This document shows, piece by piece, positions 4,153 through 63,634 of a stretch of DNA of 64,000 nucleotides. The notes below the pieces were generated by a model that was given only the letters and a program-made list of their open reading frames with translations, did no database searches and had not been told where the DNA came from. The position numbers and the translations under genes were made by a program. The DNA is from Octopus sinensis. Lineage: Eukaryota. The stretch spans positions 1,984,001 to 2,048,000 of the forward strand of contig NC_043001.1 of the NCBI RefSeq assembly GCF_006345805.1, given 5' to 3'. Numbering within the stretch: position 1 is the first letter of the stretch; each line of letters starts with the position of its first letter.

Positions 4153-4721
4153 ATATTTTTGAATGTAGCCAATTCTATGTATTTAAATACTGTCCAAAAT
4201 ATGCATACGGCTCAATTTATTGGTCCCGGCAAAGCCATAGAATGTTGCATAATTACCCAGCTCTAATTGCACTGCTCCTTAGAGTAGAAACAGCTGTAAA
4301 GTAATGAGTAATTAATACCGAGAAGTCTGAAAGTTCTTTTCAGTAGAATAAAACTTTGTTACCCTTTTGGAACACAAAACTTTCATGCTGATGGAAATCC
4401 GTATCTCATTTTTATTCAGCTTGCCAACTAAACACCACATTGATGACTTTTCGCTTTTTATCATTATCAGGAAGCAACCTATGTTTGATGCAACGAGATG
4501 TGCATCGTGGCTGCTGATAAAGTTAACAAGCACAGTTCTAGATCCAACGCTGGTTGACCTCCACCTGCTCTTTTGATGTTTTTAACATCCCACATCTGCA
4601 AGGGACGAAGACTGTGGTTTAGGAAGCTTCAACATTTATTCACTTGAAGTATGCATACAGATCCCTAATTATGAATGGATCTTATTTTCATCACTAACAA
4701 TCCTTTCTCCTAAAGGGATAA

Positions 4722-4891
4722 GGCCTGAAATTTGGTGGAGGGGGAGAGTTGATTACATCGACCCTTGCATTTAATTTATAGGCCCTCAAAGAATAAAAGT
4801 CAAAGTTGACTGTGACGGAATTTGAACTCAGAATGTAGTGATGGGTGAAATACTGCTAAGCATTTCGTCCAGCATACTAACGGTTCTGCAA
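4722..4891 (-). mobile_element. tRNA-headed SINE family A, degenerate
   Basis: Reverse complement of the family A motif TTCTGAGTTCAAATTCC...GTCAACTTTG. Confidence 0.8.
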
Positions 4892-4936
4892 GCTTACTGC
4901 CCTACTTCTGTCACTAATGAATATACATGTGTGTGT

Positions 4937-6399: not shown

Positions 6400-9300
6400 A
6401 AGGAATTGATCAGATTTATATCAAAATTCCTCTGGGCTTTTTAAAAAATGTTGTTGCATCATCTTTGTGATGGGTCTCCCTGTTTTGTAAGTTTGAATAA
6501 GCATAGTCAAAGTGACCAAAATATTGGAGATGATTTAATTCTAGCCTGGCTCATTGAGGACACACATCATCCATTCTATATATCAAAAATGTTGGAACAA
6601 TTGCAGTTAAGGAATATCTCACTTGAAGCATGTGTGAACTTCCTTCTACACAACACAATGTCACCTTTTAACAGTTGATATTCCTTTCTAAGTAGTGCCA
6701 AGTATTGCTGATGTGTATCACCTGCTCAAATAAGAAAATTTTGTAAAAGCAAATTCTATATTTACAATTACGCATTTATTACTAGATAGAAATGTTTTTT
6801 ATTTAGAAAAATATGCAAATTGTGCAGCAAAAGCAATCAATTTTCATGTTTGTGGCATTAAAAATAAAAACGTGGAATGAATTGGACAAATTAATAATGA
6901 AACCTGATGCAAAGAGAAAAGTATTTTCACTGGAGAGCAAAATGGAAACGCCCTTCCTTCCACCAAATTTATCTGAGTAATGTCACTGTGGATATGAAAG
7001 TGAATTGTAGTAAAGACATGATCTTAATTCCCAGAAACTTCCAGGTAATCACTGCTAAACTCTTACTCAAAAGTCATCAACAATTTCACAAGTTTGAAGG
7101 ATTGATGGTAAAAGCCTTGGACTTTTTTGGGGAGACACACAAAGTGAAATTGTATTTGTAGTAGTCCAAGTAATGGTCAGTCCTATTGAAACTAATAAAC
7201 TGTAAAGTGACCGTACAAGATCAATCGATAATATTGTGCCTGATGTTGAAGGCATGATGACATTCGTCATATTTAGAACATCGAAACCTAACAATTCATA
7301 TTGGTGAACCTCTTGTAGTTGAAAACATTAAAAAAAGAACAGAAATTTATGTATTTATGATGATTATTAGGCAGGCAATAATCAAATAATTTATTTGAGC
7401 TCAAGACCAACCCCTAATAATTAGTCTGCTGTTCACTCCTTAACTGGAATGAGATCTTATGTAAATTTCTTTCTCTGAACTTTTTACCAAATCTCAACAG
7501 GTTCCATCTTCAAGAAACCATTACCATTAATGCCCTGATTAATTTGGTTGTGAATTTGTGAAGGACACAAACGTCTGATGACATGAAAAACTGAACATGC
7601 CATTTTCAATGTGTGATAGCAACTAGCTTGAAAGGAGATATAAAAAGTCTATCAGAATTACATATATCTGGATGCAACCAGCCAGGGAAGATTAAACTTG
7701 AAGAATAAGGTTATATTGATCGAGATGTAAGCTTGATTATTCAATAGAGAAGAAATATAAATAAAAAGATTTCAATGGAAGTTGATTTTTCCAGATCAAG
7801 GTTTGGTCCAGAAAATATTTGACATTTCTCTGCATTCTAATGAGAAAGAATTGGAATTTCCTTTAGCAGTTGTAAATGTTTGAGGCTGATATTTGACAAA
7901 CTCTTTGTAAAATTGTATGAGAAAAATGTGAAGTATGCTTCGAGCAATGTTCAGCCAGAAGCAATGTCTTGAATTAAAAAAAGTGCCACTTGCGAAAACA
8001 TCGGATGTCAACAAAAAGCACCGTTGATAACTGAGGTTGGGGAACAAAGTATTGTCAGCAATTTTATTGCATAACTCATCCATCATTATGAAGATGGTTA
8101 ACCATGCTGTACATTCAGACACTGAAAGGGGCTTTACCAATTGTATGAACAACAAACTGTGCATGTCATTATTTATTTGATACAAAATTCCAGCTTAGAT
8201 CCTCTCGAAGTCATCTTTAATCCACATACAGGATTTCCAAGAATTAACATCTTTGATGATATTGAAATGGGCTGTCAATTTCACGGTATTTGATTTTCAC
8301 ATCACATATATCAAAAGAAATGTTATTCTTCTCTTCGATGCCACCTCACAGCTACATTTTAGTGACTGCAAACTAAGCACTGTCTTTAGATAATGTTGAT
8401 GATCAATTCATACATTGGTGTCTTACATCACCATAATTTATTTTCTGAAACACTGCTTGATCGAGTACTAAGTAAAACCATTCCTAAAATGGCAAAAGAA
8501 TGCCCAGAGTTGCTGTTCTGCCAATGCTGAATGACACAATCATGTCTGGCCTGAATTAATACTGGAAAACTGTGTCCTTGTTTCGTTCGATTATCTCAGA
8601 AATAATAATTAAAATGGTTCATGGGGCATCACTGACTTGGTAATGACTTGGTGATTTACACAAAAGATTATTGCCAGGAATGTCCTAAATACATAGAGAA
8701 GAAAAATTTCAAATGAGGAACAAAATATGTCCATTGATAATTCCTTAAGCATTTCGAAAACGATTTTTGCTGCAATGCTCCTACATTTCAATACAAAGTT
8801 CTGTCTGTTGGAGACTAAAAAAAAAAAAAATTACCTAAATTAAAATGAGCAGGTAACTTTAAAAAATGCTTTTTCCTTTTTTGAAAAAAATCTTTAACCA
8901 TATGATGCATTTTATGTAGATATGGATTCCTAGTTTGTGGGGATCGCTTACTTTGGTGTCATTTGGGTTTCATCATAGGTAACCAATTAAGGCTTAGTTA
9001 TTACCTTTTGGAAAGTTTTCGAAGGTTCTGTGGCATAATGTCTTCTGGGATATGTGACATGTTACCAAGAGGCTTGTACATGGTAGAAATCTTCCAGTCT
9101 CCTCTCCTATACCCAACGTTGTTTCTCAACAACTATGATAACTCCATATTGTCATGTGTGCAGAATCCAAACTACTGTATTGAAACAAATGAATAGAGAA
9201 AACGTAACTGGTATTTTATGCTTTATAAAATATACACATCTTTCAAAAGGTTGACCGCTGGTTTACATAACTCGGTTGACCCAATTACGCAACAGAATGA

Positions 9301-9400: not shown

Positions 9401-9700
9401 AATATGTGTATAGTGTATAAAGCATAAAATTCTGGTTATGTTTTCTGTATTCATTTGAGGCTATATTTAATTATATGTCTGTATATATATCATTATTGAT
9501 ACTACTGTTTAGCTGCAGGTCAACTCTGATTGGGTAGATCTATGACCAAAGCACTCCAGACATGATCATCCCATCTTATTTTCAATCATTACATCAAAAA
9601 TTATTAATCATATTTTACCTCAGTTTAACATCTGAGAAAGAAAATGTTATTTTTGATTGATTTCAATTTTCAGTCATTATTTTATGAAACATAAGGGGGG

Positions 9701-9908
9701 GGAGCAAGCTGGCAGAATCGTTGGCACACCGAGTGAAATGCTTAGCGGTATTTTGTCAGTTGCTACATTCTGAGTTCAAATTCCACCGAGGTTGACTTTG
9801 CCTTTCATCCTTTCGGGTTGATAAATTAAGTACCAGTAAAACACTGGGGTTGATGTAATTGACTAGTCCCCGTCCCCCCAAATTTCAGGCCATGTAGAAG
9901 GGATTATT
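9701..9908 (+). mobile_element. SINE family A
   Basis: AGCTGGCAGAATCGTT...TTCTGAGTTCAAATTCCACCGAGGTTGACTTTGCCTTTCATCC. Confidence 0.9.
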
Positions 9909-10329
9909 ACATGACACATAAAAGTTGGTTGTTTGGACTTTCAGACTTCATGAGTTTTCATAAGGTTTGTATTTCGGAATCCCTAAGAGGAATTTCCTTT
10001 TTGGATATTATATGTGATTCCACTCATTGTTAGAAATATCAAAGGATCAAAATGACCAGCCAATGTCTATGCCTGTCTGGAGACATCTACAAAATTTGGT
10101 AACATAATATAGCTGGTAATATATTTCCAGGAGTCTGAGAAAATAAGCCATGACATATAATGTCTCTTCTTTCAATGCTTTCCAAGAATTTTTGGGAAAA
10201 TATCTTATCTTGCTCATTCCTTTGACAGTTTTTGTGAATTAGAAAAGCGTCATAAGTTGTCTGTTTTTGCCCTGATTTCTTTTACACCTTCCATTGTCAA
10301 AGACAACGTCAAAGGCGTAAGTAAAATTT

Positions 10330-11510: not shown

Positions 11511-11831
11511 TTGCCATTTAGCTTGCAAGATTAAGATCCCTGACGACTGAGTGAGATTACAGTAGAGAGAAAACCAGCAGTTTCAAGCTTGGTTATGAGA
11601 CGTATGAAAGAAGGAGTCAGAGCAGAACCGGTTTCTGCAGAAAAGATACATGACGACTCACATTATGCAAGAATCAATATCGAAATAGAGATAGAAAAGA
11701 TGCAACTGGCAGTGATAAGGTGTTTGGGTCATCTTGAGGAAAGATGGGTGGATATGGGTTCCAGAATGTATGGGAAGAGTAAGTGGTGTTTGAGATATGG
11801 TAGGGGTGATAGAAGGGGACTGATATATAAC

Positions 11832-12036
11832 TATTTCTTTACTATCCCCACAGAGAGGACAAACAGATTAAGTCGATTATATCGACCCCAGTGCATAAAT
11901 GGTACTTATTTAATCGACCCCGAAATGATGAAAGGCAAAGTCGACCTTGGTGGAATTTGAACTCAGAACATAATGGCAGATGAAATACTGCGAAGCATTT
12001 CACCTGGCATGCTAACGTTTCTGCCAGCTCGCCGCC
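11832..12036 (-). mobile_element. SINE family A; 3' moiety of the U6-SINE chimera
   Basis: Minus strand GGCGGCGAGCTGGCAGAAACGTTAGC...TTCTGAGTTCAAATTCC...AGTAAAGAAATA. Complete head, short deletions in the tail relative to 55061-55291. Confidence 0.92.
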
Positions 12037-12088
12037 AAATAAATATGGAGCGCTTCACGAATTTGCGTGTCATCTTTGCGCAGGGGCC

Positions 12089-12121
<33 letters not shown>

Positions 12122-12145
12122 AATATGTACCGCCGTAGCTAGTAC
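12037..12145 (-). pseudogene. U6: Full-length U6 snRNA retrocopy; 5' moiety of the chimera
   Basis: Minus strand GTACTAGCTACGGCGGTACATATTCTAAAATTGGAACGATACAGAGAAGATTAGCATGGCCCCTGCGCAAAGATGACACGCAAATTCGTGAAGCGCTCCATATTTATTT. Eight differences from human U6 (as recalled) over the first 105 nt; ACAGAGA box and AGC triad intact. Confidence 0.97.
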
Positions 12146-13545
12146 TGATATATAACCTCAAATCCAAAGCGTAAACCTTTGTTAGTTCTTGTATCACCAG
12201 GCTTGTTGAATTCTCTTTGCAGTTCTATCTCACCTGACTAGTGATGTTGTACTTCTCATTAAGCTATTCGTGTGTTATCGGTATGATTTAGTAATATTGC
12301 TGACAGTACGGCAGGTGTTGGAAATTGAATATTAGTATACTTTTAGTACACATACTTGTAAGAAGTGACTGATTTAAGAGGGAATATTTGCTAGTATCAA
12401 AGCTTAGTTGTATTATCGTTGTCATTCTGACGGTACCATTAGTGCAACACACATCAGATACTGAGAATCTTTACTTTTGATGAAGCCCAATCAATTCATT
12501 TAATAATAATAAAAAAAAGTGTAATTTAATAAAAATGTATCTCTGGGTTATCTTTAAATGCAGAAAATTTTCATAAAGAAGCAGGTACGCAGATCCTTTG
12601 CAGGAAATCCTTAGCTGTTTTTTTCTTTTTTTGTTTCTGTCCTGAGATAGTAATATCTTTTTTCAGGTTTCAATCATTCTTTTGTAACAGCATTCTTCAA
12701 ATTTCAGTCAAAACTACCAGTGAATAATACTACTATAACTGATAATATTTGATAGAGATAATTGCCATGATGTTATTGTTTGGTAAATTCACCAGAGCTA
12801 TGGCTGTATCCTTGAACAGTATTATAACACCTTTTGACATTTTTCAATCCAATCAAAGTTGATGTCAGCTTTAGATGTGGACAGACCAAAAGAATGTGTA
12901 ATTTTCATATGAAAAGGCCTCATGGATTATTGCAGAACCTTTTGGCAAGGTTATAAAAACCCTTGCATTTAGCTCTCAATAGGATATCTTCTTGCAGCAG
13001 CTGTAATCTCTCTTTAGACCCACGTTAAATATAATCTTGATCCCTACAGTTTCTTTCTAATAGATTATTCCTGTTGTAACTGGAGATTATGTCCTGCATT
13101 CGTACGAGATATTTCAGCACTCATCTTTGGAGAATTCCATTGTTTCCTAATTCCCTCACGTAACACCCACATACACACTTGCACATATTTATAGTAATAA
13201 CAATAATAATCCTTGGTTGGAATTTATAAATATCTTAATGTTTCGCTATGCACGTTTCCATAAACTACATGTTTCTTATGATCATAGTCCATATCCTTGG
13301 AACGACTACAGAGCATTCCAAAGTATCGATGAACATGATGTACATGATGTCCATGGATACTACGGAATGCAATGTAATCGTTCCAGGAATATAGACTATG
13401 ATCTTAAGAAACATGTAATTTGTGGAAATGCACATAGCGATACATCACGATATATATATATTCTATCCAAGGATATTATTGTTATTACTATATATATATA
13501 TGTGTGTTAGTGTGTGTGTGTGTGTGTGTGTGCATGTGTGTGTGT

Positions 13546-13585
<40 letters not shown>

Positions 13586-13826
13586 CCCTCTAAGTATCCA
13601 TAAGTCAGAAAAAATATGCATTTGTATATTTGTGAAACAAGTGCATATATTACAAGAAGTGTACAGTATTATATACTCATTATGACCGATCTCACCAATT
13701 GGTTTCAACTGAGGTTTCATTCGATGTTAGACATCAACCGGATTATGGAACTCTGCACTCATCAGCCTCGATAGTTAAGGAAGAAAATATGGCAACACAC
13801 ACACACACACACGCACACACAGATAT

Positions 13827-17183: not shown

Positions 17184-17697
17184 AAAATATATTTCCTAAG
17201 TGGTGTTCAATTGATTGTATTTTAAGTCAAGTTGGCATTCATGTCTCATGAAATCAAACATTGAATTCACTTTGTCTGATTAGTTTTATTTTCTGCTGAT
17301 AAATACATTGATATTAGAAATAAATAAACAAGAGAGCATAAAATCTAAAATCTAAAACAACTATTTCCAGTAAATGGGCCATAAAATCATACTCGTAGAC
17401 AATCAGATCATTTACCAATATTCTTCAGCGTATTATTTCAAGAGGATTATTTTTCTCCCAACTACAAAGTGTATATTTTCTAAACCTACAGAGAAAGGTT
17501 ACGAGACAGACACAGTTTTATTAATGAGTATCCGAACAGACAGAAATGCAGCCGTGCCATACCATACACACATACAAACACGAAACTCTGTTCTGTATAT
17601 ACATATCAATAATTCTTATGTGCTATGTTTGTGCACATATGTGTATATGCTATATAGACATATGTGTGTGTGTATGTATACACACATACATACATAC

Positions 17698-17756
<59 letters not shown>

Positions 17757-17803
17757 TCATGCTAGCATGGAAAACGTACGTTAAACGATGATGATGATGA
17801 TGA

Positions 17804-17848
<45 letters not shown>

Positions 17849-17919
17849 ATGTGTGTGAGTGTGTGTGCATACATGCATATGTGTGTCTGTGAGTGTGTGC
17901 GTGTGTATATATATATTTA

Positions 17920-18090
17920 TATCATCATTGGCTGTTTGCTTTCCATACTGTCATGGATTGGATGGTTTGACAAGATCCAGCCAGCTGCAAGGATGTATTG
18001 AGCTCCAATATCATCCTTAGCATGGTTCCTACAGATGGATACACCTCCTGATGCCAACCACCTTCCTCGATGTAAGTTGGGATTTTTGTC
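17920..18090 (-). mobile_element. RTE 3' end fragment
   Basis: TTTCCATACTGTCATGGATTGGATGG...CCTCCTGATGCCAACCAC is a reverse-complement RTE tail; faces a short plus-strand tail at 17757-17807. Confidence 0.7.
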
Positions 18091-18099
18091 TAGCCACTG

Positions 18100-18635
18100 G
18101 CATACATACATACATGCATACATACGTACATGCATGCATACATACATACATACATGCATACATACATACACATACATACATACATACATACATACATACA
18201 TACATACACACACACATACATACATACATACATACATACATACATACATACATACATACATACACACACACACATACATACATACATACATACATACATA
18301 CATACATACATACATACACATACATACGTACATGCATACATACATACATACATACATACATACTTACATACATACATACATACACACATACATGCACACA
18401 TACATACATACATAATACATACATACATACATACATACATACATACATACACATACATACATACATGCATACATACACATACATGCATACATGCATACCT
18501 ACATATATACACACACACATACATACATACATACATACATACATACATACATACATACACACATACATACATACATGCATACATACATACATACATTCAC
18601 ACATACGTACATACATTCATACATACATACATACA
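18100..18635. repeat. Long (TACA)n microsatellite
   Basis: Directly visible, ~535 bp. Confidence 0.97.
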
Positions 18636-18639
18636 GTGA

Positions 18640-20120
18640 GAATAGTCAAAGCCATAGCTGACCTGAATTCATCATGGGCCACCATCTTGAAATTAAACAC
18701 AAAGGGTGACTGTATTATCCCCGATAGAAAGAATACAATATTGCCAGGGTATATTCCAAGGAGACAACCGCCCTGTGATGTTGTTTATTCTTTCTATAAA
18801 CCCCTTGTCATTCATTTTAAGGAAGTTTGAGGGATTTCTCACTGGTTCACAAAGAAACAGAAATACCAAGCAATATGCATGAGATGGAAAGGAGCCTTGA
18901 CCTAGTTACATCCTCAAAGGATGTAGGGTTGAAGTCTGGTCAGAATAAATGTCGTTATATGGTTGTTAAAGGTGGAAGACTATAAACCAGACTAGTAACA
19001 TCTCCATCAATATTTTGACCATTTCACCTGTATCTGACGAGGAATGTTACAGGTATCTAGGGGTGGATGAAAATATATCTTACAATGGCACCTGTAACAA
19101 AACACATGTCACTAAGAATATTACAGCCATATAAAGAAAATATGGTCCTCAGATCTCTCTGCATTCAATAAAACAGTGGCCCACAATGTGTTTGCAGTAC
19201 CAGTACTCATACCAACATTTGGGCTGCTTGACTGGATGCTTGATGAGATCCAAGCCACTGGTGTGAAAACCCGAAAAATACCAACAAGCACACAGAATTT
19301 TCACATAAACAGAGATGTAGACCAACCCTACCTAAAAAGAAAACAAGGTAGCAAAGGCTTATCATCGATCCAAAATGCCTTTGAGTGTCGCATCATATCC
19401 CTTCAGCAACATCTTCTAACCACCAAGTATCAAAGTGCATCCCTTGACTAAGTTTGCATACATGGGGCTGATAACATCATAAGACTTGGAAGGCAGCTCT
19501 TTGAGCAACATTCTTTGTCTGATAACCTAGAATACATGCCCAAAGAAATTGCATGAATCTACCACAACATATCAATAGATGAAAGGATGAGCTTATATGA
19601 GCAGAAGACTATGCATGGATATGTTACTAGAAAGCTCCGAGATGATAGTAACATCGATCATCAAAGCAATCTATCATGGACCAATAGCCAGATTGCTACC
19701 TCTCACTTTGAATTGGTTTATGTTTACAATCCAGGAACAGGAAATATCAGCCAAATACCTGATGCACAAAAAGGATAGAGATGCAAGAACGGCAATAAAA
19801 TGCGACAAGGGATGCAGACTTTGTGGAGTTCACACTGAAGATATCAGCCACATCATAAGCAGTTGTCTGAAAATGTCATCACAGTATTATCTAATGATGA
19901 GACATGATGTTGTAGCTAGGAGACTCTATAATGAAATCCCTCAGAAAGATAACCCAGAGGACAAAGAAATAAGGACCCACAGTATGGTAGAAGCTATAGT
20001 CACTCATAATGAAAAGGAATACTGGTGGAATCTCCTTGTGAAAACCTCAATAAAATGTAAGCACAACAGACCTGATATAAAGATTTGGGACAGAGAAGAG
20101 AAACTGTGCACAATCAATGT
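18640..20120 (+). mobile_element. R4/Dong-like non-LTR retrotransposon (restriction-like endonuclease type), 5'-truncated and decayed
   Basis: YRYLGVDENISY; HNVFAVPVLIPTFG...DVDQPYLKRKQGSKGL; IQEQEISAKYL; CCHC knuckle CRLCGVHTEDISHIISSC (19813-19866); RHDVVA; HNRPDIKIWDREEKLCTI (PD motif ~20070). Confidence 0.85.
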
Positions 20121-20300
20121 TAGTGTGTTTATGTCCCTGTAATTTAGCTGTTCGGCAAAAAAGACCAATAGAATAAGTACTAGGCTTTCAAAAATAAGTC
20201 CTAGGTTTGATTTCTTTGATGACTAAAACTTTATAAGGAAGTGCTCCAGCATGGCTGCAGTCAAATGACTGAAAGAATAAAAGAGAGAATAAAAGAATAT
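20121..20300 (+). mobile_element. SINE family B 3' half
   Basis: Family B tail abutting the truncated R4-like element. Confidence 0.85.
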
Positions 20301-24045: not shown

Positions 24046-25112
24046 ATCTTTTGTCAGGTGTACAACCACTTCTCCCGCTTGCTTTCCTTCTCTTAGCTGA
24101 GAAGTCTTTGACTTGCAAGCTATGAGGTGACCCTGCTGGCACCATGGAAAATACATTTCTTCTGGTGCCAGGTGAAAGGTACTTGTGCTGGTGCCAGGTA
24201 AAAAGCACCCTGTGCACATTATAAAGAGGTTGGTGTTAAGAAGGGCATCCAGCCATAGAAACCAGGACAAAGCATATAAATGGAGTCGGGTGCAACTCTC
24301 CAGCCTTGCCAGCTCCTGTCCAACCGCCCAACTCATGCCAGCATGGAAGATGGATATTAAATAATGATGATGATGGATATGATGACGACGATGACGATGA
24401 TGAGAAAAACAACCACACACGCAGACAACCTATTTGTGAGAAAGGTTTAAAAGGCTTAATTCATCACCTTGTTTGATGCTGCCGCCTGGTCGTTGGCTGT
24501 CTTTAATAGATTTTGCTCTGTCGGAAGAATTCTGCCCTTCTGTTTCCTCACTAAATGGTAAATAAACCTTTTTGCTTTATTATTATTTGGGGAAAAATAA
24601 TAATATACCATTAGGAATGGAATACTTTTGGCTTCTATCTATATCCTGGTCACTGGTAATCTAAGAACGACTTTGATATTTAATAACATGTATTAAGTCA
24701 GCAAAATAATGATGGAAAAAAAGCACACAAGCGAAGAAGTGTGTGTGTGTGTGTGTGTTGTGTGTGTGTGTGTGTGTGGTGTGTGTGTGCTAATGATGAC
24801 ACTATTATTATAGTAGAGAGCAATTGTTCTATCCTTAACACCAGCCTCACATCGACTCATTTTCCAAAGTACAACTGAAAAATATTGCTGAAAAATATGC
24901 GAAAAGTAAAAATATTTTTCATACATTAAAAATATATAAGGAAAGGAAAAAAGAAAAAGAAAAAGTGGAAAAGAAATGAAGAGACATCTACACCACAGGC
25001 ATACACACACACATACATATGTGTGTGTGTATATATGTATGTAGGCATATATATATATGTACGTATGTATATATGTATGTACACACGTATGCATAAATAT
25101 ATACATATATAC

Positions 25113-25157
<45 letters not shown>

Positions 25158-25765
25158 TCTATATATATATGTATGTATGCACATATTGCATGTATGCATA
25201 TATATACACATATATGTATGTACATATGTATGTACGCACGTATGCATACATATATATATATTTATATATATATATATATATATATTTATTTATCTATGTA
25301 TATATGTATGTATGTATATAATGTACACACGCATATGCACATGTAGACATACACACCATACATGTATACACAGACATACACAGATGTATTTCTTTCTCAG
25401 AATCCATCCATGATTTGGTGACATCTTATTTGTAATTATAGATATTTCAACTTAGACTTACTGACAAAGCATTTTTTCCAACGAATGCTGTGTGTATGTG
25501 TGTGGGGGGGTGTATACATCTATGTGTGAATGAGTATAAGCTTATGAGTGTATGTGTCTGTATAAGTGTATATGTGTGTGAGTGTATGTAAGTGTGTGTG
25601 TGTGCATGCATGTGTATGTGTGTGTGCGTGTGTGTGTGTGTGTGTGTGCATGTGTTTGTTCATATAGTTTTGTAAGGATTTACTAAGTTCCCTGTAGGAT
25701 TGTAAAGCATGTATATATACACGACTGTATGTATGTGTATGGATATATATAGAAATGTGCATATG

Positions 25766-26744: not shown

Positions 26745-26939
26745 TAGGTGGCGAGCTGGCAGAATCATTAGCACACCGTTCTGAGTTGAAATTCCGCCGA
26801 GGTTGACTTTGCCTTTCATCCTTTCGGGGTCGATAAATTAAGTACTAGTTATGCACTGGGGTTGATATAATTGAGTTAATCCGTTTGTCTGTCCTTGTTT
26901 GTCCCCTCTATGTTTAGCCCCTTGAGGGCAATAGAGAAA
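26745..26939 (+). mobile_element. SINE family A with 18-bp TSD and internal deletion
   Basis: TSD TAAGACATGACATGGACA at 26727-26744 and 26940-26957; segment between the A and B boxes missing. Confidence 0.93.
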
Positions 26940-31481: not shown

Positions 31482-33020
31482 AGAGCTGTGCGAGCCATGT
31501 ACAGAGACGCTGCTAGTAAGGTGAGGGTTGGCATCGAGTACAGTGAAGAATTCAGGGTAGAGGTTGGGGTCCACCAAGGTTCAGTCCTCAGTCCCCTCCT
31601 ATTTGTCATAGTCCTCTAGGCAATAACGGAGGAATTCAAGACAGGAAGCCCCTGGGAGCTCCTCTATGCTGATGACTTTGCTCTAATTGCTGAGTCACTA
31701 TCAGAACTAGAGGAGAAGTTTCAGGTGTGGAAGCAAGGTCTAGAATCGAAGGGCCTCAGAATCAATCTAGCCAAAACCAAAGTCCTAATAAGTAGGAAAG
31801 TAAACAAGTCACAAACGCCTTCAGGTAGATGGCCCTGCTCAATCTGTAAAAAAGGTGTAGGTAGAAACTCTATAAGGTGCACCAAGTGTAAGCTATGGAC
31901 ACATAAGAGGTGTAGCAATGTCAAAGGAAGGCTAACTAGGAAAATAGTTTTTGTCTGTGGCAGATGCTCAGGAGCAATAAACACTGAAAATGTGCAGAGA
32001 CCAACGTCTACCATGTTCCAGGGAGAAAAACTAGAAGTAGTTGATAGCTTCCGCTACCTAGGTGACCAAGTCAGTAGCGGGGGTGGATGTGCTGAAAGTG
32101 TAACTGCTAGAGTAAGAATAGCCTGGGCAAAGTTTAGAGAGCTCTTACCCCTGCTGGTGACAAAAGGCCTCTCACTCAGAGTAAAAGGCAGACTGTATGA
32201 TGCATGCGTACGTACAGCCATGCTACATGGTAGTAAAACATGGGCTGTGACTGCTGAGGATATGCGTAAGCTCGCAAGAAATGAAGCCAGTATGCTCCGA
32301 TGGATGTGTAATGTCAGTGTTCATAATTGACAGAGTGTAAGTACCTTGAGAAAAAAGTTGGACCTAAGAAGCATCAGTTGTGGTGTGCAAGAGAGACGTC
32401 TGCGCTGGTAGTGAGAATAGGTGAAGATAGTTGTGTGCAAAAGTGCCACACTCTAGCAGTTGAGGGAACCTGTGGAAGAGGCAGACCAAGGAAAACCTGG
32501 AACGAGGTGGTGAAGCACGACCTTCGAACTTTAGGTCTCACCAAGGAAATGACTAGAGACCGAGACCTATGGAAGTATGCTGTGCATGAGAAGACCCGGC
32601 AAGACCAGTGAGAACAGTCAAAATCAAACCAAATCAACATCAGTGGAAATTGCTGCTGTGGTTAAGCGAACCATCCAATCGTTTGTCCGTTGCCAGTCTC
32701 GCCTGGCCCCCGTGCCGTTGGCACGTAAAAGCACCATCCGCTCGTGTCCGTTGCCAGCCTTGCCTGGCCCCCGTGCCGGTAGCATGTAAAAACACCATCC
32801 GTTCGTGGCCGTTTGCCAGCTCTGTCTGGCACTTGTGCAGGTGGCATGTAAAAAGCACCCACTACACTTTAGGAGTGGTTGGCGTTAGGAAGGGAATCCA
32901 GCCGTAGAAACACTGCCAAATCTGACTGGGCCTGATGAAGCCTTCCGGCTTCCCAGACCCCAGTTAAACCATCCAACCCATGCTAGCATGGAGAACGGAC
33001 GCTAAATGATGATGATGATG
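31482..33020 (+). mobile_element. 5'-truncated RTE-clade LINE (RT, PHD-like insert, 3' UTR, (ATG)n tail)
   Basis: GVHQGSVLSPLLF; stop at 31617-31619; LLYADD (31665-31676); LRINLAKTK; WPCSICKKGVGRNSIRCTKCKLWTHKRC...CGRC; FRYLG; GRGRPRKTW; stop at 32328-32330; modular 3' UTR. Confidence 0.95.
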
Positions 33021-44390: not shown

Positions 44391-44461
44391 AGCAATCAAT
44401 TCTGCTATGGTGGCCAGGTGTTCTTGAGCACAGCAAGGTACCAAATATTTTGATCCATGAA

Positions 44462-44660
44462 AGGTGAGCTGGCAGAATCGTTAGCATGGCAGGAAAAACG
44501 TTTAGCAGCATTTTCTTTGTCTTTGTGTTCAAATTCCACTGAGGGCAACTTTGCCTTTCTTTCTTTTAGGGCTGATAAAATAAGTATCATTTGAGCAGTG
44601 GGGTCATGGGGTCAATATAAGTGACTTTCCCTCTCCCTTGTGCCAAAATTTGAAACCTCT
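44462..44660 (+). mobile_element. SINE family A, degenerate
   Basis: GGTGAGCTGGCAGAATCGTTAGC...GTTCAAATTCC. Confidence 0.8.
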
Positions 44661-50753: not shown

Positions 50754-51495
50754 CAGGGTGGGGCAGAGAGGACTGACGTTTTTGAAATGGCCATTACTCA
50801 GTGGCAGAGAGAGGGACATATGTCTGACAGGTACCATTTGGTCACTGGTGTCTTATTATTTTTTTTCTTTCCAGGTGAAGCCATGGCAATGTGGATGATA
50901 GAGCATTGCATGTTTGCCTACAACAGTTATGTGAAGAATAACGAGTCTGTTACAGCAGTTCAAGATGAGTTTCAGTGCCACTTCAATATTCACCAAAATC
51001 AGACTGCTCCCACCCATAACACAATCTTACATTGGGGGAATACACTTCATACACGAGGTACACTAAGGAATAGGAAACTGGTGGGGCATCATGAATGGTA
51101 CGGACCCCAGAAAATGGGGAATGCATCAGACAAGCTTTGATATGGAGTCCGAATTGCTCTGCTAGGAGACATTCCACTGAACTCGGCATCAGTAATTGAT
51201 CAGTAAGGTGTATTTTGCATGAAGACCTGTATTTCCACCTGTACAAGTTGGTCATTAGACAACAGTTGAAACCATGGGACCATGCACAGTGGCTTAACTT
51301 TGCATGTTAGATGGAAACAATTTTTTAGGCAAATGACAACCTCATTTTGTAAATGAGTGAGGAAGCTCATCTTCATCTCAATGGCTTGGTGAATCAACAG
51401 AACTGTCATTATTGGGCTCTTGAAAATCCAAGAGAATTGCGTGAAAGGCCACTGCGCAGCCCCAAAGTGATGGTCTGGTGTGCTGCCAGAAAAAC
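50754..51495 (+). mobile_element. Tc1/mariner DD41D (rosa/Visitor)-like transposon, 3'-truncated
   Basis: TA followed by TIR-like CAGGGTGG; DUF4817-type HTH (YVKNNESVTAVQDEFQCHF...PTHNTILHW); SEEAHLHLNGLVNQQNCHYWALENP...PKVMVWCA. Confidence 0.75.
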
Positions 51496-51683
51496 TGCCA
51501 TCATTAGTCATTTTGCATACATCTCAAACTTTTCTGAAATGGTAATAAGCACAATAACCTGGAGACTAATTCACCCTGTAGAAAAACATGGCTATCATAT
51601 GCTTGCATTTGCTTTATGCTTTATGGCCATATCTTCAGCTTGCTTCAGGTCATGGCAAAACATGCTTCCAATAAGACTAGTGC

Positions 51684-51823
51684 TTGCTTCATGTTGTAGG
51701 CAGGTATGGCTATAATCTACCTGAGTTTGCTTCATGTTGTAGGCAGGTATGGCTATAATCTACCTGAGTTTGCTTCATGTTGTAGGCAGGTATGGCTATA
51801 ATCTACCTGAGTTTACTTCATGT
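51684..51823. repeat. 43-bp tandem repeat x3.25
   Basis: TTGCTTCATGTTGTAGGCAGGTATGGCTATAATCTACCTGAGT starts at 51684, 51727 and 51770. Confidence 0.95.
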
Positions 51824-53654: not shown

Positions 53655-53724
53655 GGGAAATCATTGAAAGCTCATGATGGACAATGATTTTCCAGCAGAA
53701 GAAAATCAATATTGGTTTCAAATT

Positions 53725-53920
53725 TTGGCTCAAGGCCAGAAATATTGGGGGGGGGGGAAGTCGAATGCATCAACCCCAGTACATGACTGGTAGTTATTTT
53801 ATTGACCCTAAAAAGATGAAAGGCAAAGTCAACTGCTGGGAAAGTGAACCCAGAACTTGAAGATGAACAAAATGCTGATAACCATTTTGCCCAGCATCCT
53901 GATGAGTCTGCCATCCTAAT
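53725..53920 (-). mobile_element. SINE family A, degenerate
   Basis: GATGAAAGGCAAAGTCAAC is the reverse complement of the family A core. Confidence 0.7.
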
Positions 53921-54004
53921 GAGCCTTAACGAGACATTGATTATAATAATATACAGTCATGTATCTCTATGCATATATTTATGCATATATTTACATATTA
54001 CATT

Positions 54005-55060: not shown

Positions 55061-55291
55061 CTGTTTCTTTATTACCCACAAGGGGCTAAACACAGAGAGG
55101 ACAAACAAGGACAGACAAACAGATTAAGTCGATTACATCGGCCCCAGTGCGTAACTGGTACTTAGTTTATTGACCCCGAAACAATGAAAGGCAAAGTCGA
55201 CCTCGGTGGAATTTGAACTCAGAATGTAACGGCAGACGACATACTGCTAAGCATTTCGCCCGGTGTGCTAACGATTCTGCCAGCTCGCCGC
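55061..55291 (-). mobile_element. SINE family A, full length
   Basis: Complete head to TAATAAAGAAA tail; used as the local reference copy. Confidence 0.93.
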
Positions 55292-55565
55292 ATCACCACC
55301 ATCTTCGTTTGACGTCTGCTTTCCATGCTGGCATGGGTTGGATGGTTTGACCAAGGACTTGCAAGCCAGGAAGCTGCAACAGGCTCCAGTCTGACTTGGC
55401 AAGATTTCTACAACTGGATGCCCTTCCTAATGCTGGCCATTCTGAGAGTGTAGTTGGTGCTCTTTACGTTTCATCAGTGTGGGAACCAGTTAAGCAGCAC
55501 TGGCATTGGCCATGCTCAAATGGTGCTTTTTACAAGCCACCAGCATGGGTGCCAGTCAAGCAGCA
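55292..55565 (-). mobile_element. RTE 3' end fragment abutting the SINE A head
   Basis: TTCCATGCTGGCATGGGTTGGATGG...GGATGCCCTTCCTAATGC. Confidence 0.85.
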
Positions 55566-56111: not shown

Positions 56112-56325
56112 AGGTGGTGAGCTGGCAGAAACGTTAGCATGCCAGGCAAAATGCTTTGCCATATTTCGTCTGTCTTTATGTACTGAGTTCAAATTCCGCC
56201 GAGGTCGACTCTGCCTTTTCATCCTTTCAGGGTCAAAAAATTAAGTACCAGTTGCGTACTGGAGTCAATCAACTGATTTCCTCCTCCAAAATTTCGTGCC
56301 TTGTGCCTAGAGTAGAAAAGGAAAT
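56112..56325 (+). mobile_element. SINE family A
   Basis: GGTGGTGAGCTGGCAGAAACGTTAGC...GAGTTCAAATTCCGCCGAGGTCGAC. Confidence 0.88.
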
Positions 56326-57139
56326 ACATGCATATGTATAAATGCATCTGTATGTGTATATACACGTATAAATTTAGATGAAATGAAATAAGTTTCTGGC
56401 AGGTCATCCCAAACTTTAGTAGAGGGTTAATTGGGGCTAAAACATATCCAGCTGATGGCAGTTTGTTTTCCATTGAATAATTTGTTGAGATACTGTTTGT
56501 AAGTTATGAGCTTATTTTGTTTCTACGTTTGGTTTCGGATATTTTGAAATAGGGCAGGGCCAAGTGAGGCACGAATTTGTATCATTATTGTGCTGCTGCG
56601 AGACATGTAAAGTATGGTATCCTAGCTTTGAAAGGTTTCTTAAACTTGATTCTAATATCGTTTTTGCAACACTGGTTGCATATTTCCTGCAAAATACAAA
56701 ATGGATAATGTTCCTGGCAGCTTTGGGGAAAACAATTTTCAAGTATTTACAATACTGTTTTCCCCAGAAATGTAGCGTTCAATAAAGTACCATTGGATGG
56801 TGCCGATGTAGCAAATAGAAAGGCAATGGCATTTGGAAACCGAGGATTCCAAGAATTAATTCTGTGAGCTGTATCGACTTTGTTGTTGGTTTGACTCCCT
56901 CAGCAGAAGCTTCTCTCAACGAATAGCTCGAATATGAGTAAGTATATGCATACACACACATACAAATACAAGCATACGTACATACATGTGTACATACATA
57001 TACGTGCACATACATGCACATGTACACATATACATAAATAGATCTCAAATTCTTTCAAACTAATTGCATTCACAAGGTTCGAATCGAACTGAACCTACAG
57101 ACCAAACTCTTGATCAAAAAGTGTCACAAAAACGATTGA

Positions 57140-62169: not shown

Positions 62170-62490
62170 GGTGTGGCACGTAAAAAACACCATTCGAGTG
62201 GGATCGTTACAAGCGTCACCTTACTGGCACTTGTGCCGGTGTGCAGGTGACATGTAAAGAGAAAAGAAAAGAAAGAAAACACGATTTTTTCGTGGCTGTT
62301 GCCAGTACTGCCTGACTGGACATAGTGCTGGTGGCACATAAAAGCACCCACTACACTCTCAGAGTGGTTGGCATGAGGAAGGGCAGATCAAGATTGGAGC
62401 CCAGTGCAGCCATCTGGTTTGTCAGTCCTCAGTCAAATCATCCAACCCATGCTAGCGTGGAAAGCGGACGTTAAACGACGATGATGATAT
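62170..62490 (+). mobile_element. RTE 3' UTR fragment
   Basis: CCAACCCATGCTAGCGTGGAAAGCGGACGTTAAACGACGATG. Confidence 0.85.
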
Positions 62491-62632
62491 ATATACATAT
62501 ACACATGCATACATATATATATATATACATATACGTATACATAAGTGTGTGCATGCATGTGTATATATATACATATACACACACATACATACATACACAC
62601 ACATATATATATGTATATGTTTACATATGTAA

Positions 62633-62785
62633 GCATCATCATCATCATCATCATCGTTTAGCGTCCGTTTTCCATGCTAGCATGGGTTGGACGGTTCTAC
62701 TGGGGTCTGTGAAGCCAGAAGGCTTCATCAGGCCCAGTCAAATCTGGCAGTGTTTCTACGGCTGGATGCCCTTCCTAACGCCAAG
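62633..62785 (-). mobile_element. RTE 3' end fragment, inverted relative to 62170-62490
   Basis: CATCATCGTTTAGCGTCCGTTTTCCATGCTAGCATGGGTTGGACGG. Confidence 0.9.
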
Positions 62786-62841
<56 letters not shown>

Positions 62842-63053
62842 CATCCAATAATACTATACTTGTTCCACGTCCTCATGTTGTTGTGTTTTCTCTTTCTGTT
62901 TTCATGTTTGGATTAACTATATATATACCTCGAACACACAAGTGCAAACAAGGGAGTCAGAGAAAGGCAGAATGCCACTTAAATCTGAACACTACTATAG
63001 AAATATTCTTTTAAGAAAACTTTTCTTCTAATTTTTCTAAATTTAATTATTTA

Positions 63054-63225: not shown

Positions 63226-63264
63226 ATATGTGTGTGTATATATGTTCGTAATTATTGGTCTCAA

Positions 63265-63465
63265 ATTTTGGCCCAAAGCCAGCAAGTTTAGGGAAATGGT
63301 TAGTTGATTATAGCAACCCCAATACTCAACTGGTATACATTTTATCGAACCTGAAAGGAAGAAAGGCAAAGTCAACCTTGACAGAATTTGAACTCAGAAC
63401 ATAAAGATGGACGAAATACCACTAAGCATTTACCTCAGCATGCCAACGATTCTGCCAGCTTACCA
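63265..63465 (-). mobile_element. SINE family A
   Basis: GGCAAAGTCAACCTTGACAGAATTTGAACTCAGAA...CGATTCTGCCAGCTTACC. Confidence 0.85.
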
Positions 63466-63634
63466 TTTTCACAGTTCATAATATTGAGAACAAAAACAAA
63501 AAAAACTCCAGAAGAATGCAAATACCTTATGGCAAAGCTGACTGATGCAGCTTCAACTGTGAACTCAAATCATTTTAGGTAGAACAAAGTGGGCATATGG
63601 TGTAGTGGTTAAAAGTGACCTGAATAATAATAAT

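What the first reader, a model, noticed from the sequence alone, without database searches (positions are those of the whole stretch)
11819..12156. U6 snRNA-SINE chimera inserted as one unit (shared target-site duplication)
Seen: on the minus strand a complete U6 (12145-12037) runs with no intervening genomic DNA into the first base of a family A tRNA-SINE (GGCGGCGAGCTGG, 12036-11832). One TSD, TGATATATAAC (11821-11831 and 12146-12156), brackets both parts; it extends to 13 bp through a 2-nt microhomology with the U6 5' end. So the 314-bp cassette was inserted in one target-primed event. Known: U6-L1 chimeras in mammals arise by RNA ligation (RtcB acting on the U6 2',3'-cyclic phosphate) or by template switching, usually onto LINE fragments. 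Inference: a U6 joined to a SINE with a complete 5' head in a cephalopod-like genome is, to my knowledge, not a described class. It is either a one-off chimera or a member of a U6-headed composite SINE family.
Basis: partly seen in the sequence, partly recalled or inferred. Interest (0 to 1): 0.9.

Follow-up and report, generated by a model that had tools for sequence, protein, structure and literature searches.

The report
U6–SINE chimeric retrocopy in octopus
A dead copy of the U6 spliceosomal RNA is fused head-to-tail to a complete SINE and was pasted into an octopus genome in one retrotransposition event; such chimeras are known in human, platypus and lizard but, as far as I could find, not in a mollusc.

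Summary
A full-length U6 (Rfam 106.7 bits, model 1-105) lies at 12145-12039 on the minus strand. After two more T's it abuts the first base of a 205-bp SINE (12036-11832). An exact 13-nt direct repeat (11819-11831 and 12144-12156) brackets the pair. At that spacing, other exact 11-mer repeats in the window occur only inside microsatellites. SINE copies of this family have 13-18-nt target-site duplications. An Octopus vulgaris copy starts GGCGGCGAGCTGGCAG directly after its duplication, so the SINE head in the chimera is complete. No duplication flanks the SINE alone.

The U6 is a pseudogene. It has no TATA box near -30 and no T4 terminator, and a conserved G is mutated. The host is an Octopus, judged from LINE protein hits.

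The single-event reading is supported. The claim that this is an undescribed class is not: Doucet et al. 2015 report U6/Alu, U6-Mon-1 and six U6-AnolisSINE2 chimeras.

The idea of a composite family has no support. None of the other 12 SINE copies examined carries U6. It could not be tested genome-wide, because no available collection holds raw cephalopod DNA.

The most likely mechanism is an end-to-end template jump by a LINE reverse transcriptase from the SINE RNA 5' end onto U6. This is a new member of a known kind, of modest interest.

The parts
12146..12156 (.). 5' copy (in element orientation) of the target-site duplication. It is TGATATATAAC on the plus strand and extends to 12144-12156 (13 nt) by overlapping U6 nt 1-2 (GT).
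   Evidence: Exact identity with 11819-11831; sequence read.
12037..12145 (-). Full-length U6 snRNA retro-pseudogene. The 5' stem-loop is intact and the ACAGAGA and AGC elements are present. It carries G->A in the conserved CAAGGAUG and has the tail UUUAUUU.
   Evidence: Rfam RF00026, 106.7 bits, model 1-105/105 at 12145..12039. It is the only U6 in the window.
12036..12037 (-). U6/SINE junction. The last T of the U tail abuts the first G of the SINE, with no intervening genomic DNA.
   Evidence: Sequence. The SINE 5' end is defined by an O. vulgaris copy whose duplication abuts GGCGGCGAGCTGG and by c26747 and c56113.
11832..12036 (-). Complete SINE copy of 205 bp: head GGCGGCGAGCTGGCAG, box-B-like GAGTTCAAATTCC, and a non-poly(A) tail ...GTAAAGAAATAG. 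It is about 26 nt shorter than its nearest relatives in the 3' third.
   Evidence: BLASTN and MAFFT against 8 other window copies and one O. vulgaris copy.
11819..11831 (.). 3' copy of the target-site duplication (plus strand ACTGATATATAAC, 13 nt).
   Evidence: The flanks beyond it are unrelated to each other and are unique in the window.

Best explanation
This is a bipartite chimeric retrocopy made in a single target-primed reverse transcription event in an Octopus genome.

Proposed sequence of events: a LINE reverse transcriptase nicked the target at ...ATATAAC/CTCAAA (plus strand) and primed on the non-poly(A) 3' tail of a SINE RNA. The tail type suggests a 'stringent' LINE; the partner was not identified. 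The enzyme copied the SINE RNA to its very 5' end, then continued onto the 3' U tail of a U6 snRNA and copied that to its first nucleotide. The cDNA end was joined to the upstream target through a 2-nt microhomology (GT). Staggered second-strand cleavage left a 13-nt duplication.

The product is inert. U6 lost its external promoter, and both parts have since decayed.

Shown: the anatomy, the single shared duplication, the completeness of both parts, and the pseudogene status.
Inferred: the enzyme, the order of copying, and template jump rather than prior RNA ligation.
For: - Full-length U6 and a full-length SINE are directly abutted in the same orientation.
- One exact 13-nt direct repeat brackets both parts. 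At that spacing, other exact 11-mer repeats in the window occur only inside microsatellites.
- The repeat length fits the family. Other copies have duplications of 13-18 nt: c26747 and c56113, and the O. vulgaris copy at L003:19803.
- No repeat of >=8 nt flanks the SINE alone. By inspection, at best 2 nt (TT) could be shared.
- The SINE head begins at exactly the base that follows the duplication in an independent O. vulgaris copy. The switch therefore happened at the end of the SINE template, as in end-to-end jumping (Bibillo & Eickbush 2004, cited in PMC4494074).
- The U6 is not a gene. TTATATAT lies at -10..-3 and belongs to the duplicated target, there is no TATA near -30, and no run of >=4 T separates U6 from the SINE. 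A conserved G is changed to A.
- Precedent: U6-SINE chimeras made by L2-type LINEs in platypus and Anolis, and U6/Alu in human (PMC4476161).
- RtcB ligation needs a 5'-OH and is strongly reduced with a 5'-triphosphate (PMC6789731). A complete Pol III SINE transcript would carry a 5'-triphosphate, which favours a template jump over ligation.
Against: - No empty site or intermediate state could be examined, because no collection available here holds the orthologous locus.
- The duplication is AT-rich and partly low-complexity (TATATA).
- The U tail (UUUAUUU, 7 nt against the usual 5 U) cannot be attributed with certainty to U6, to untemplated addition or to later mutation.
- The partner LINE sharing the SINE tail was not found in the window.
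- Template jump and prior RNA ligation cannot be separated from one genomic copy.
Confidence: 0.8

Rival explanations
1. The same single-event chimera, but the two RNAs were ligated before reverse transcription. RtcB or a similar ligase would join the U6 2',3'-cyclic phosphate to a 5'-OH SINE RNA, and the chimeric RNA was then retrotransposed through the SINE tail.
For: Shown for human U6/L1 (PMC6789731). It explains why U6 in particular is the recurrent 5' partner, and the U6 is complete with its U tail.
Against: - The SINE is complete to its first base. A primary Pol III transcript has a 5'-triphosphate, which was a poor RtcB substrate.
- The tail has 7 nt rather than the mature 5 U, which fits an untrimmed 3'-OH form at least as well.
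Confidence: 0.2
2. Two independent insertions. Either a U6 processed pseudogene was inserted first and a SINE later landed exactly at its 3' end, or the reverse order.
For: Nested insertions at element tails are common. Doucet et al. treat one U6atac/Alu case without a duplication this way.
Against: - The only duplication brackets both parts.
- The SINE would have had to insert precisely between the last U6 T and the 3' duplication copy while making <=2 nt of its own duplication. The family norm is 13-18 nt.
- U6 pseudogenes standing alone are rare where stringent LINEs operate.
Confidence: 0.07
3. The cassette is one copy, or the founder, of a propagating U6-headed composite SINE family.
For: - snRNA-headed SINEs exist (U1/U2-derived SINEU, PMC4494074).
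- The U6-SINE boundary lacks a T4 terminator (TTTATTT), so Pol III would not stop there.
Against: - Only one U6 is in the window.
- None of the other 8 window copies or the 4 SINE copies read in L003 (3 by motif; a fourth seen on reading 8360-8570) has U6 sequence upstream.
- The animal U6 promoter is external and is not carried along, as recalled in PMC4494074. The SINE's internal promoter would start transcription at the SINE, not at U6.
- The cassette is old and decayed.
Confidence: 0.04
4. A genuine U6 gene with an unrelated SINE downstream, the flanking repeat being chance.
For: The U6 is full length, with an intact 5' stem and catalytic motifs.
Against: - No TATA at -30.
- No terminator.
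- A conserved G is mutated.
- An exact 13-nt repeat sits at both independently defined boundaries.
Confidence: 0.01

Closest known systems
U6-SINE chimeras of vertebrates: U6-Mon-1 (platypus), U6-AnolisSINE2 (Anolis, six copies), and U6/Alu and U6atac/Alu (human). Source: Doucet et al. 2015, PMC4476161.
   Same: - U6 at the 5' end fused directly, in the same orientation, to a SINE.
- The pair is flanked by one target-site duplication.
- In platypus and Anolis the SINE has a LINE-specific, non-poly(A) tail and is attributed to stringent L2-type LINEs, as is likely here.
   Different: - The host is a cephalopod mollusc.
- Here U6 is full length, whereas most platypus U6-L2 chimeras are 5'-truncated and have 1-9-bp duplications.
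- The duplication here is 13 nt.
- The SINE is complete to its first base. The paper's text as read does not say whether that holds for the vertebrate cases.
U6/L1 chimeric pseudogenes of mammals (Buzdin 2002/2003; Garcia-Perez 2007; Moldovan 2019, PMC6789731)
   Same: A full-length U6 with its U tail forms the 5' part, joined in sense to a retroelement, with one duplication around both.
   Different: - The 3' part there is a variably 5'-truncated L1 with poly(A) and a TT/AAAA target.
- Here it is a complete SINE without poly(A).
- The RtcB route shown for U6/L1 needs a 5'-OH, which an intact SINE transcript should lack.
Fungal bipartite and tripartite chimeras (WEIRD-MgSINE, WEIRD-MgSINE-MGL; PMC2104539)
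   Same: A cellular non-coding RNA is fused to a SINE, flanked by 12-14-bp direct repeats, outside vertebrates. The chimeras are attributed to template switching by a LINE reverse transcriptase.
   Different: The 5' partner is WEIRD, not U6, and the Mg-SINE part is 5'-truncated.
snRNA-headed SINEs (SINEU, from U1/U2; Kojima 2015, PMC4494074)
   Same: An snRNA sequence sits at the 5' end of a SINE body, and template jumping is invoked for its acquisition.
   Different: SINEU are multi-copy families with master copies. Here a single copy is seen, and the snRNA is U6, which has an external Pol III promoter.

Membership tests
U6 spliceosomal RNA (Rfam RF00026) | Covariance-model score above the gathering threshold over the full model, with the 5' stem-loop and the ACAGAGA/AGC elements | tested here: met
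   106.7 bits against 44, model 1-105/105, no non-standard pair flagged. GATACAGAGAAGATTAGC is read in the sequence.
Functional U6 gene (Pol III type 3) | Upstream TATA box near -30 with a PSE, a run of >=4 T as terminator, and unmutated conserved core | tested here: not met
   -31..-24 reads GTTTACGC. The only TATA-like run is at -10..-3, inside the duplicated target. The tail is TTTATTT. CAAGGAUG has become CAAAGAUG. The octopus PSE consensus is unknown to me, so the PSE was not tested.
Bipartite chimeric retrogene (criteria listed in PMC2104539) | The 5' part is a full-length copy of a cellular RNA | tested here: met
   U6 model positions 1-105 are all matched.
Bipartite chimeric retrogene | Both parts directly joined in the same transcriptional orientation | tested here: met
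   Both parts are on the minus strand and the junction is at 12037|12036 with no spacer.
Bipartite chimeric retrogene | The chimera as a whole is flanked by short direct repeats | tested here: met
   Exact 13-nt repeat at 11819-11831 and 12144-12156. No repeat of >=8 nt flanks the SINE alone.
Bipartite chimeric retrogene | The 3' part is a 5'-truncated copy, truncated at a random site | tested here: not met
   The SINE starts at its first base, the same base that abuts the duplication in L003:19803. This is a variation on the type (an end-of-template switch), not an exclusion of the mechanism.
U6-SINE chimera (Doucet 2015 sense) | U6 followed by a SINE, flanked by a duplication, formed in one event | tested here: met
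   The one-event status is inferred from the duplication. No empty site was seen.
Composite snRNA-headed SINE family (SINEU-like) | Several copies sharing the same U6-SINE junction with different duplications | tested here: inconclusive
   0 of 8 other window copies and 0 of 4 O. vulgaris copies read in L003 have U6 upstream. A genome-wide count was impossible, because no cephalopod DNA is in the searchable collections.
tRNA-derived SINE | A recognisable tRNA-like head (cloverleaf, box A and box B) | tested here: inconclusive
   ARAGORN finds none and Rfam gives no tRNA hit at E<=10. A box-B-like GAGTTCAAATTCC is conserved in all copies. Octopus SINEs are reported to be tRNA-derived (Ohshima & Okada 1994, cited in PMC4758252).
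CORE-SINE (as octopus OR2, MIR, Mon-1) | The shared CORE central domain | tested here: not met
This is a crude test and OR2 itself was not available.

The most novel reading that the evidence does not exclude
The cassette is a copy or progenitor of a U6-headed composite SINE lineage in octopods. The degenerate terminator (TTTATTT) would let Pol III read from U6 into the SINE. This would be the first SINE with a U6-derived head.
Probability: 0.04. Interest if true: 0.6.

Novelty: new member of a known kind. Interest (0 to 1): 0.3.

Why it matters
If confirmed in octopus assemblies, this extends U6 capture by LINE machinery from vertebrates (and an analogous case in a fungus) to a lophotrochozoan. 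That would suggest the propensity of U6 to be co-retrotransposed is ancient and independent of LINE clade.

The junction lies at the very first base of an intact SINE. That is the signature expected of end-to-end template jumping, and it is awkward for the RtcB ligation route. A genome-wide census of such junctions in octopus could therefore help weigh the two models outside mammals. On its own, one decayed copy is an anecdote.

Tried and rejected
1. Looking for other junction copies through proteins. The 61-aa ORF spanning flank, U6 and junction was searched against 5.8 billion proteins. It gave 431 U6-derived ORFs from many eukaryotes. None of the 120 listed continued into this SINE or had the octopus-type 5' stem.
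   - A control search with the SINE-encoded ORF found nothing at all.
   - Eleven window ORFs are absent from the collection.
   - The database therefore holds no raw cephalopod DNA, and this negative says nothing about copy number.
2. Metagenome scan with a degenerate junction pattern. The single hit, L001, is a chance match in a coding region with no U6.
3. SINE core pattern in genome contigs and viral contigs: no hits.
4. Paralogous empty site. The joined flanks match nothing else in the window.
5. Partner LINE. The SINE tail matches only SINE copies in the window.
6. Further snRNA or tRNA fragments. Rfam at E<=1 returned only microsatellite-driven miRNA noise.
7. CORE-SINE affinity: not supported by a crude alignment.
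8. Dating the two halves against each other. The SINE shows 16 differences in 161 well-supported columns, but several are shared with another subfamily, so its own source sequence is unknown. The U6 shows about 3-4 differences in 109 nt. There is no conflict, but also no discriminating power.

Full report
**What is there.** Read on the minus strand, the region is:

...TTTGAG | GTTATATATCA | GTACTAGC...U6...CCATATTTATTT | GGCGGCGAGCTGGCAG...SINE...GTAAAGAAATAG | TTATATATCAGT | CCCC...

cmscan places a complete U6 (RF00026, 106.7 bits, gathering score 44, model 1-105 of 105, E = 8.5e-27) at 12145..12039. All five pairs of the 5' stem are standard, including an A-U where the consensus has C-G, so the source was a lineage-specific functional U6. 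Two more T's (12038-12037) extend its U tail. It is the only U6 in the window at the gathering threshold, by BLASTN and at E<=1.

**The SINE.** The 205 bp from 12036 to 11832 belong to a repeat with eight other copies in the window at 72-88% identity. These align from a head GG(C/T)GG(C/T)GAGCTGGCAG through a conserved GAGTTCAAATTCC. Three copies (this one, 55291-55061 and 26747-26939) share a non-poly(A) tail ending AAAGAAA(C/T)A(G/A). The chimera's copy is about 26 nt shorter in the 3' third.
- ARAGORN and Rfam at E<=10 do not recognise a tRNA in the head. The tRNA origin rests on the literature on octopus SINEs (Ohshima & Okada 1994, cited in PMC4758252), not on a test made here.

**Is the SINE head complete?** Yes.
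- A LINE ORF in the window (31725-32330) has its best named relatives in Octopus vulgaris (90% identity) and O. bimaculoides. This identifies the host as an Octopus.
- It also gave access to 21 kb of an O. vulgaris chromosome (L003). A SINE copy there begins GGCGGCGAGCTGGCAG immediately after its duplication ATTAAAAG(G)CAGTTT.
- In the window, c26747 (15-18-nt duplication) and c56113 (13-18 nt) carry at most two extra bases before GG.
- The chimera's junction is therefore at the first base of the SINE.

**The duplication.** The plus-strand 13-mer ACTGATATATAAC is exact at 11819-11831 and 12144-12156. Eleven of these nt lie outside the insert and two coincide with U6 nt 1-2. That overlap is the microhomology commonly seen at 5' junctions of target-primed insertions (my knowledge of L1 5' junctions).
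- At this spacing, the only other exact 11-mer repeats in 64 kb are inside microsatellites.
- The boundaries were fixed independently by the U6 model and the SINE alignment. A chance 11-mer there has a probability of about 1e-6 to 1e-5 (my arithmetic from base composition).
- The length matches the family's own duplications.
- No repeat of >=8 nt flanks the SINE alone. At most TT could be shared.
- The flanks are otherwise unrelated and unique.

**Gene or pseudogene?** The TATA-like TTATATAT lies at -10..-3 and is part of the duplicated target. Positions -31..-24 read GTTTACGC. No run of four T's terminates the U6, and the conserved CAAGGAUG reads CAAAGAUG. This is a retro-pseudogene.

**Mechanism.** The anatomy is that of the bipartite chimeric retrogenes defined by Buzdin and colleagues (criteria in PMC2104539): a full-length cellular RNA at the 5' end, direct sense fusion, and one pair of direct repeats. 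The one difference is that the 3' partner is not truncated.

I think the most likely route is target-primed reverse transcription of the SINE RNA by its partner LINE, followed by an end-to-end template jump onto the 3' end of U6 (Bibillo & Eickbush 2004, cited). The alternative is RtcB ligation of the U6 2',3'-cyclic phosphate to a 5'-OH RNA before retrotransposition, which is established for human U6/L1 (PMC6789731). In that study a 5'-triphosphate acceptor worked poorly, and an intact Pol III SINE transcript should carry one. This argument is an inference. One genomic copy cannot decide between the two routes.

**Rivals.**
- Two independent insertions would need a SINE to land exactly between the U tail and the 3' duplication copy while making almost no duplication of its own.
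- A composite U6-headed family has no support. None of the other 12 SINE copies I could read has U6 upstream, and the animal U6 promoter is external.
- A real U6 gene is excluded by the points in the pseudogene paragraph.

**Comparison with what is known.** Doucet et al. 2015 (PMC4476161) report or cite all of the following, and conclude that template switching to U6 is general to non-LTR retrotransposons:
- U6/Alu chimeras (Buzdin 2003; Garcia-Perez 2007);
- a U6atac/Alu with a 14-bp duplication;
- U6 chimeras with the SINE Mon-1 in platypus;
- six U6-AnolisSINE2 chimeras in Anolis.

My own protein search also surfaced a human contig in which a complete U6 is followed, after one A, by a full Alu head (L002). 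That contig ends inside the Alu, so its duplication could not be checked.

I found no report of U6 chimeras in cephalopods, molluscs or other invertebrate animals. The library is incomplete, so this is absence of evidence only.

**Limits.** Neither the empty site nor the genome-wide copy number could be examined. The protein collections hold no raw ORFs from this genome. The one metagenome scan gave a chance hit. The SINE is absent from the prokaryotic and viral collections.

**Verdict.** The kind is already known in vertebrates, and a mollusc would be a new host lineage. Interest is modest.

Noticed in passing
window 55061-55292(-), 56113-56330(+), 9700-9910(+), 26747-26939(+), 63256-63467(-), 44460-44657(+), 4720-4901(-), 53713-53923(-): Eight more copies of the same SINE superfamily with at least two different 3' tails: tail A ...GGGTAATAAAGAAACAG and tail B ...CAAATTTCAGGCCTTGTGCCAAAATTTGAAACCA. 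The copy at 26747 has a 36-nt internal deletion and a clean 15-18-nt duplication.
   Followed up: partly
window 31725-32330 (+): A LINE fragment ORF (reverse-transcriptase C-terminal region with a PHD-type zinc finger). It is 90% identical to an Octopus vulgaris predicted protein and 70-85% to O. bimaculoides proteins, which identifies the host lineage.
   Followed up: partly
window 19597-20142 (+); 50787-51715 (+): Other transposon remnants: an ORF with a weak zf-RVT match (LINE C-terminus) and ORFs with a weak DUF4817 helix-turn-helix match, which look like a mariner/Tc1-type transposase fragment. All are below Pfam cut-offs.
   Followed up: no
window, many sites (e.g. 1167-2400, 17600-18830, 24700-25400, 62480-62850): Dense (CATA)n, (TA)n and (TG)n microsatellites. 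They produce long spurious ORFs and about 190 sub-threshold Rfam hits to mir-297, mir-466 and mir-3149. None reaches a gathering score.
   Followed up: yes
window 12072-12090 (+): The strand opposite U6 gives a weak match to the 5' end of U4 (AUCUUUGCGCAGGGGC, 11.6 bits). This is simply the complement of the U6 segment that pairs with U4 and is not a gene.
   Followed up: yes
This is probably a human U6/Alu chimera or a nested insertion. The contig ends inside the Alu, so no duplication could be checked.
   Followed up: partly
L003 8160-8760 (O. vulgaris OX597814.1, about 48.567 Mb): Three SINE copies in a row in the same orientation, separated by (ATT)n runs. This could be a tandem or nested SINE cluster.
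   Followed up: no
window 13423-13601 (+): A weak SCARNA7 match (32.6 bits against a gathering score of 65, E = 7e-4) in a microsatellite-rich stretch, probably spurious.
   Followed up: no
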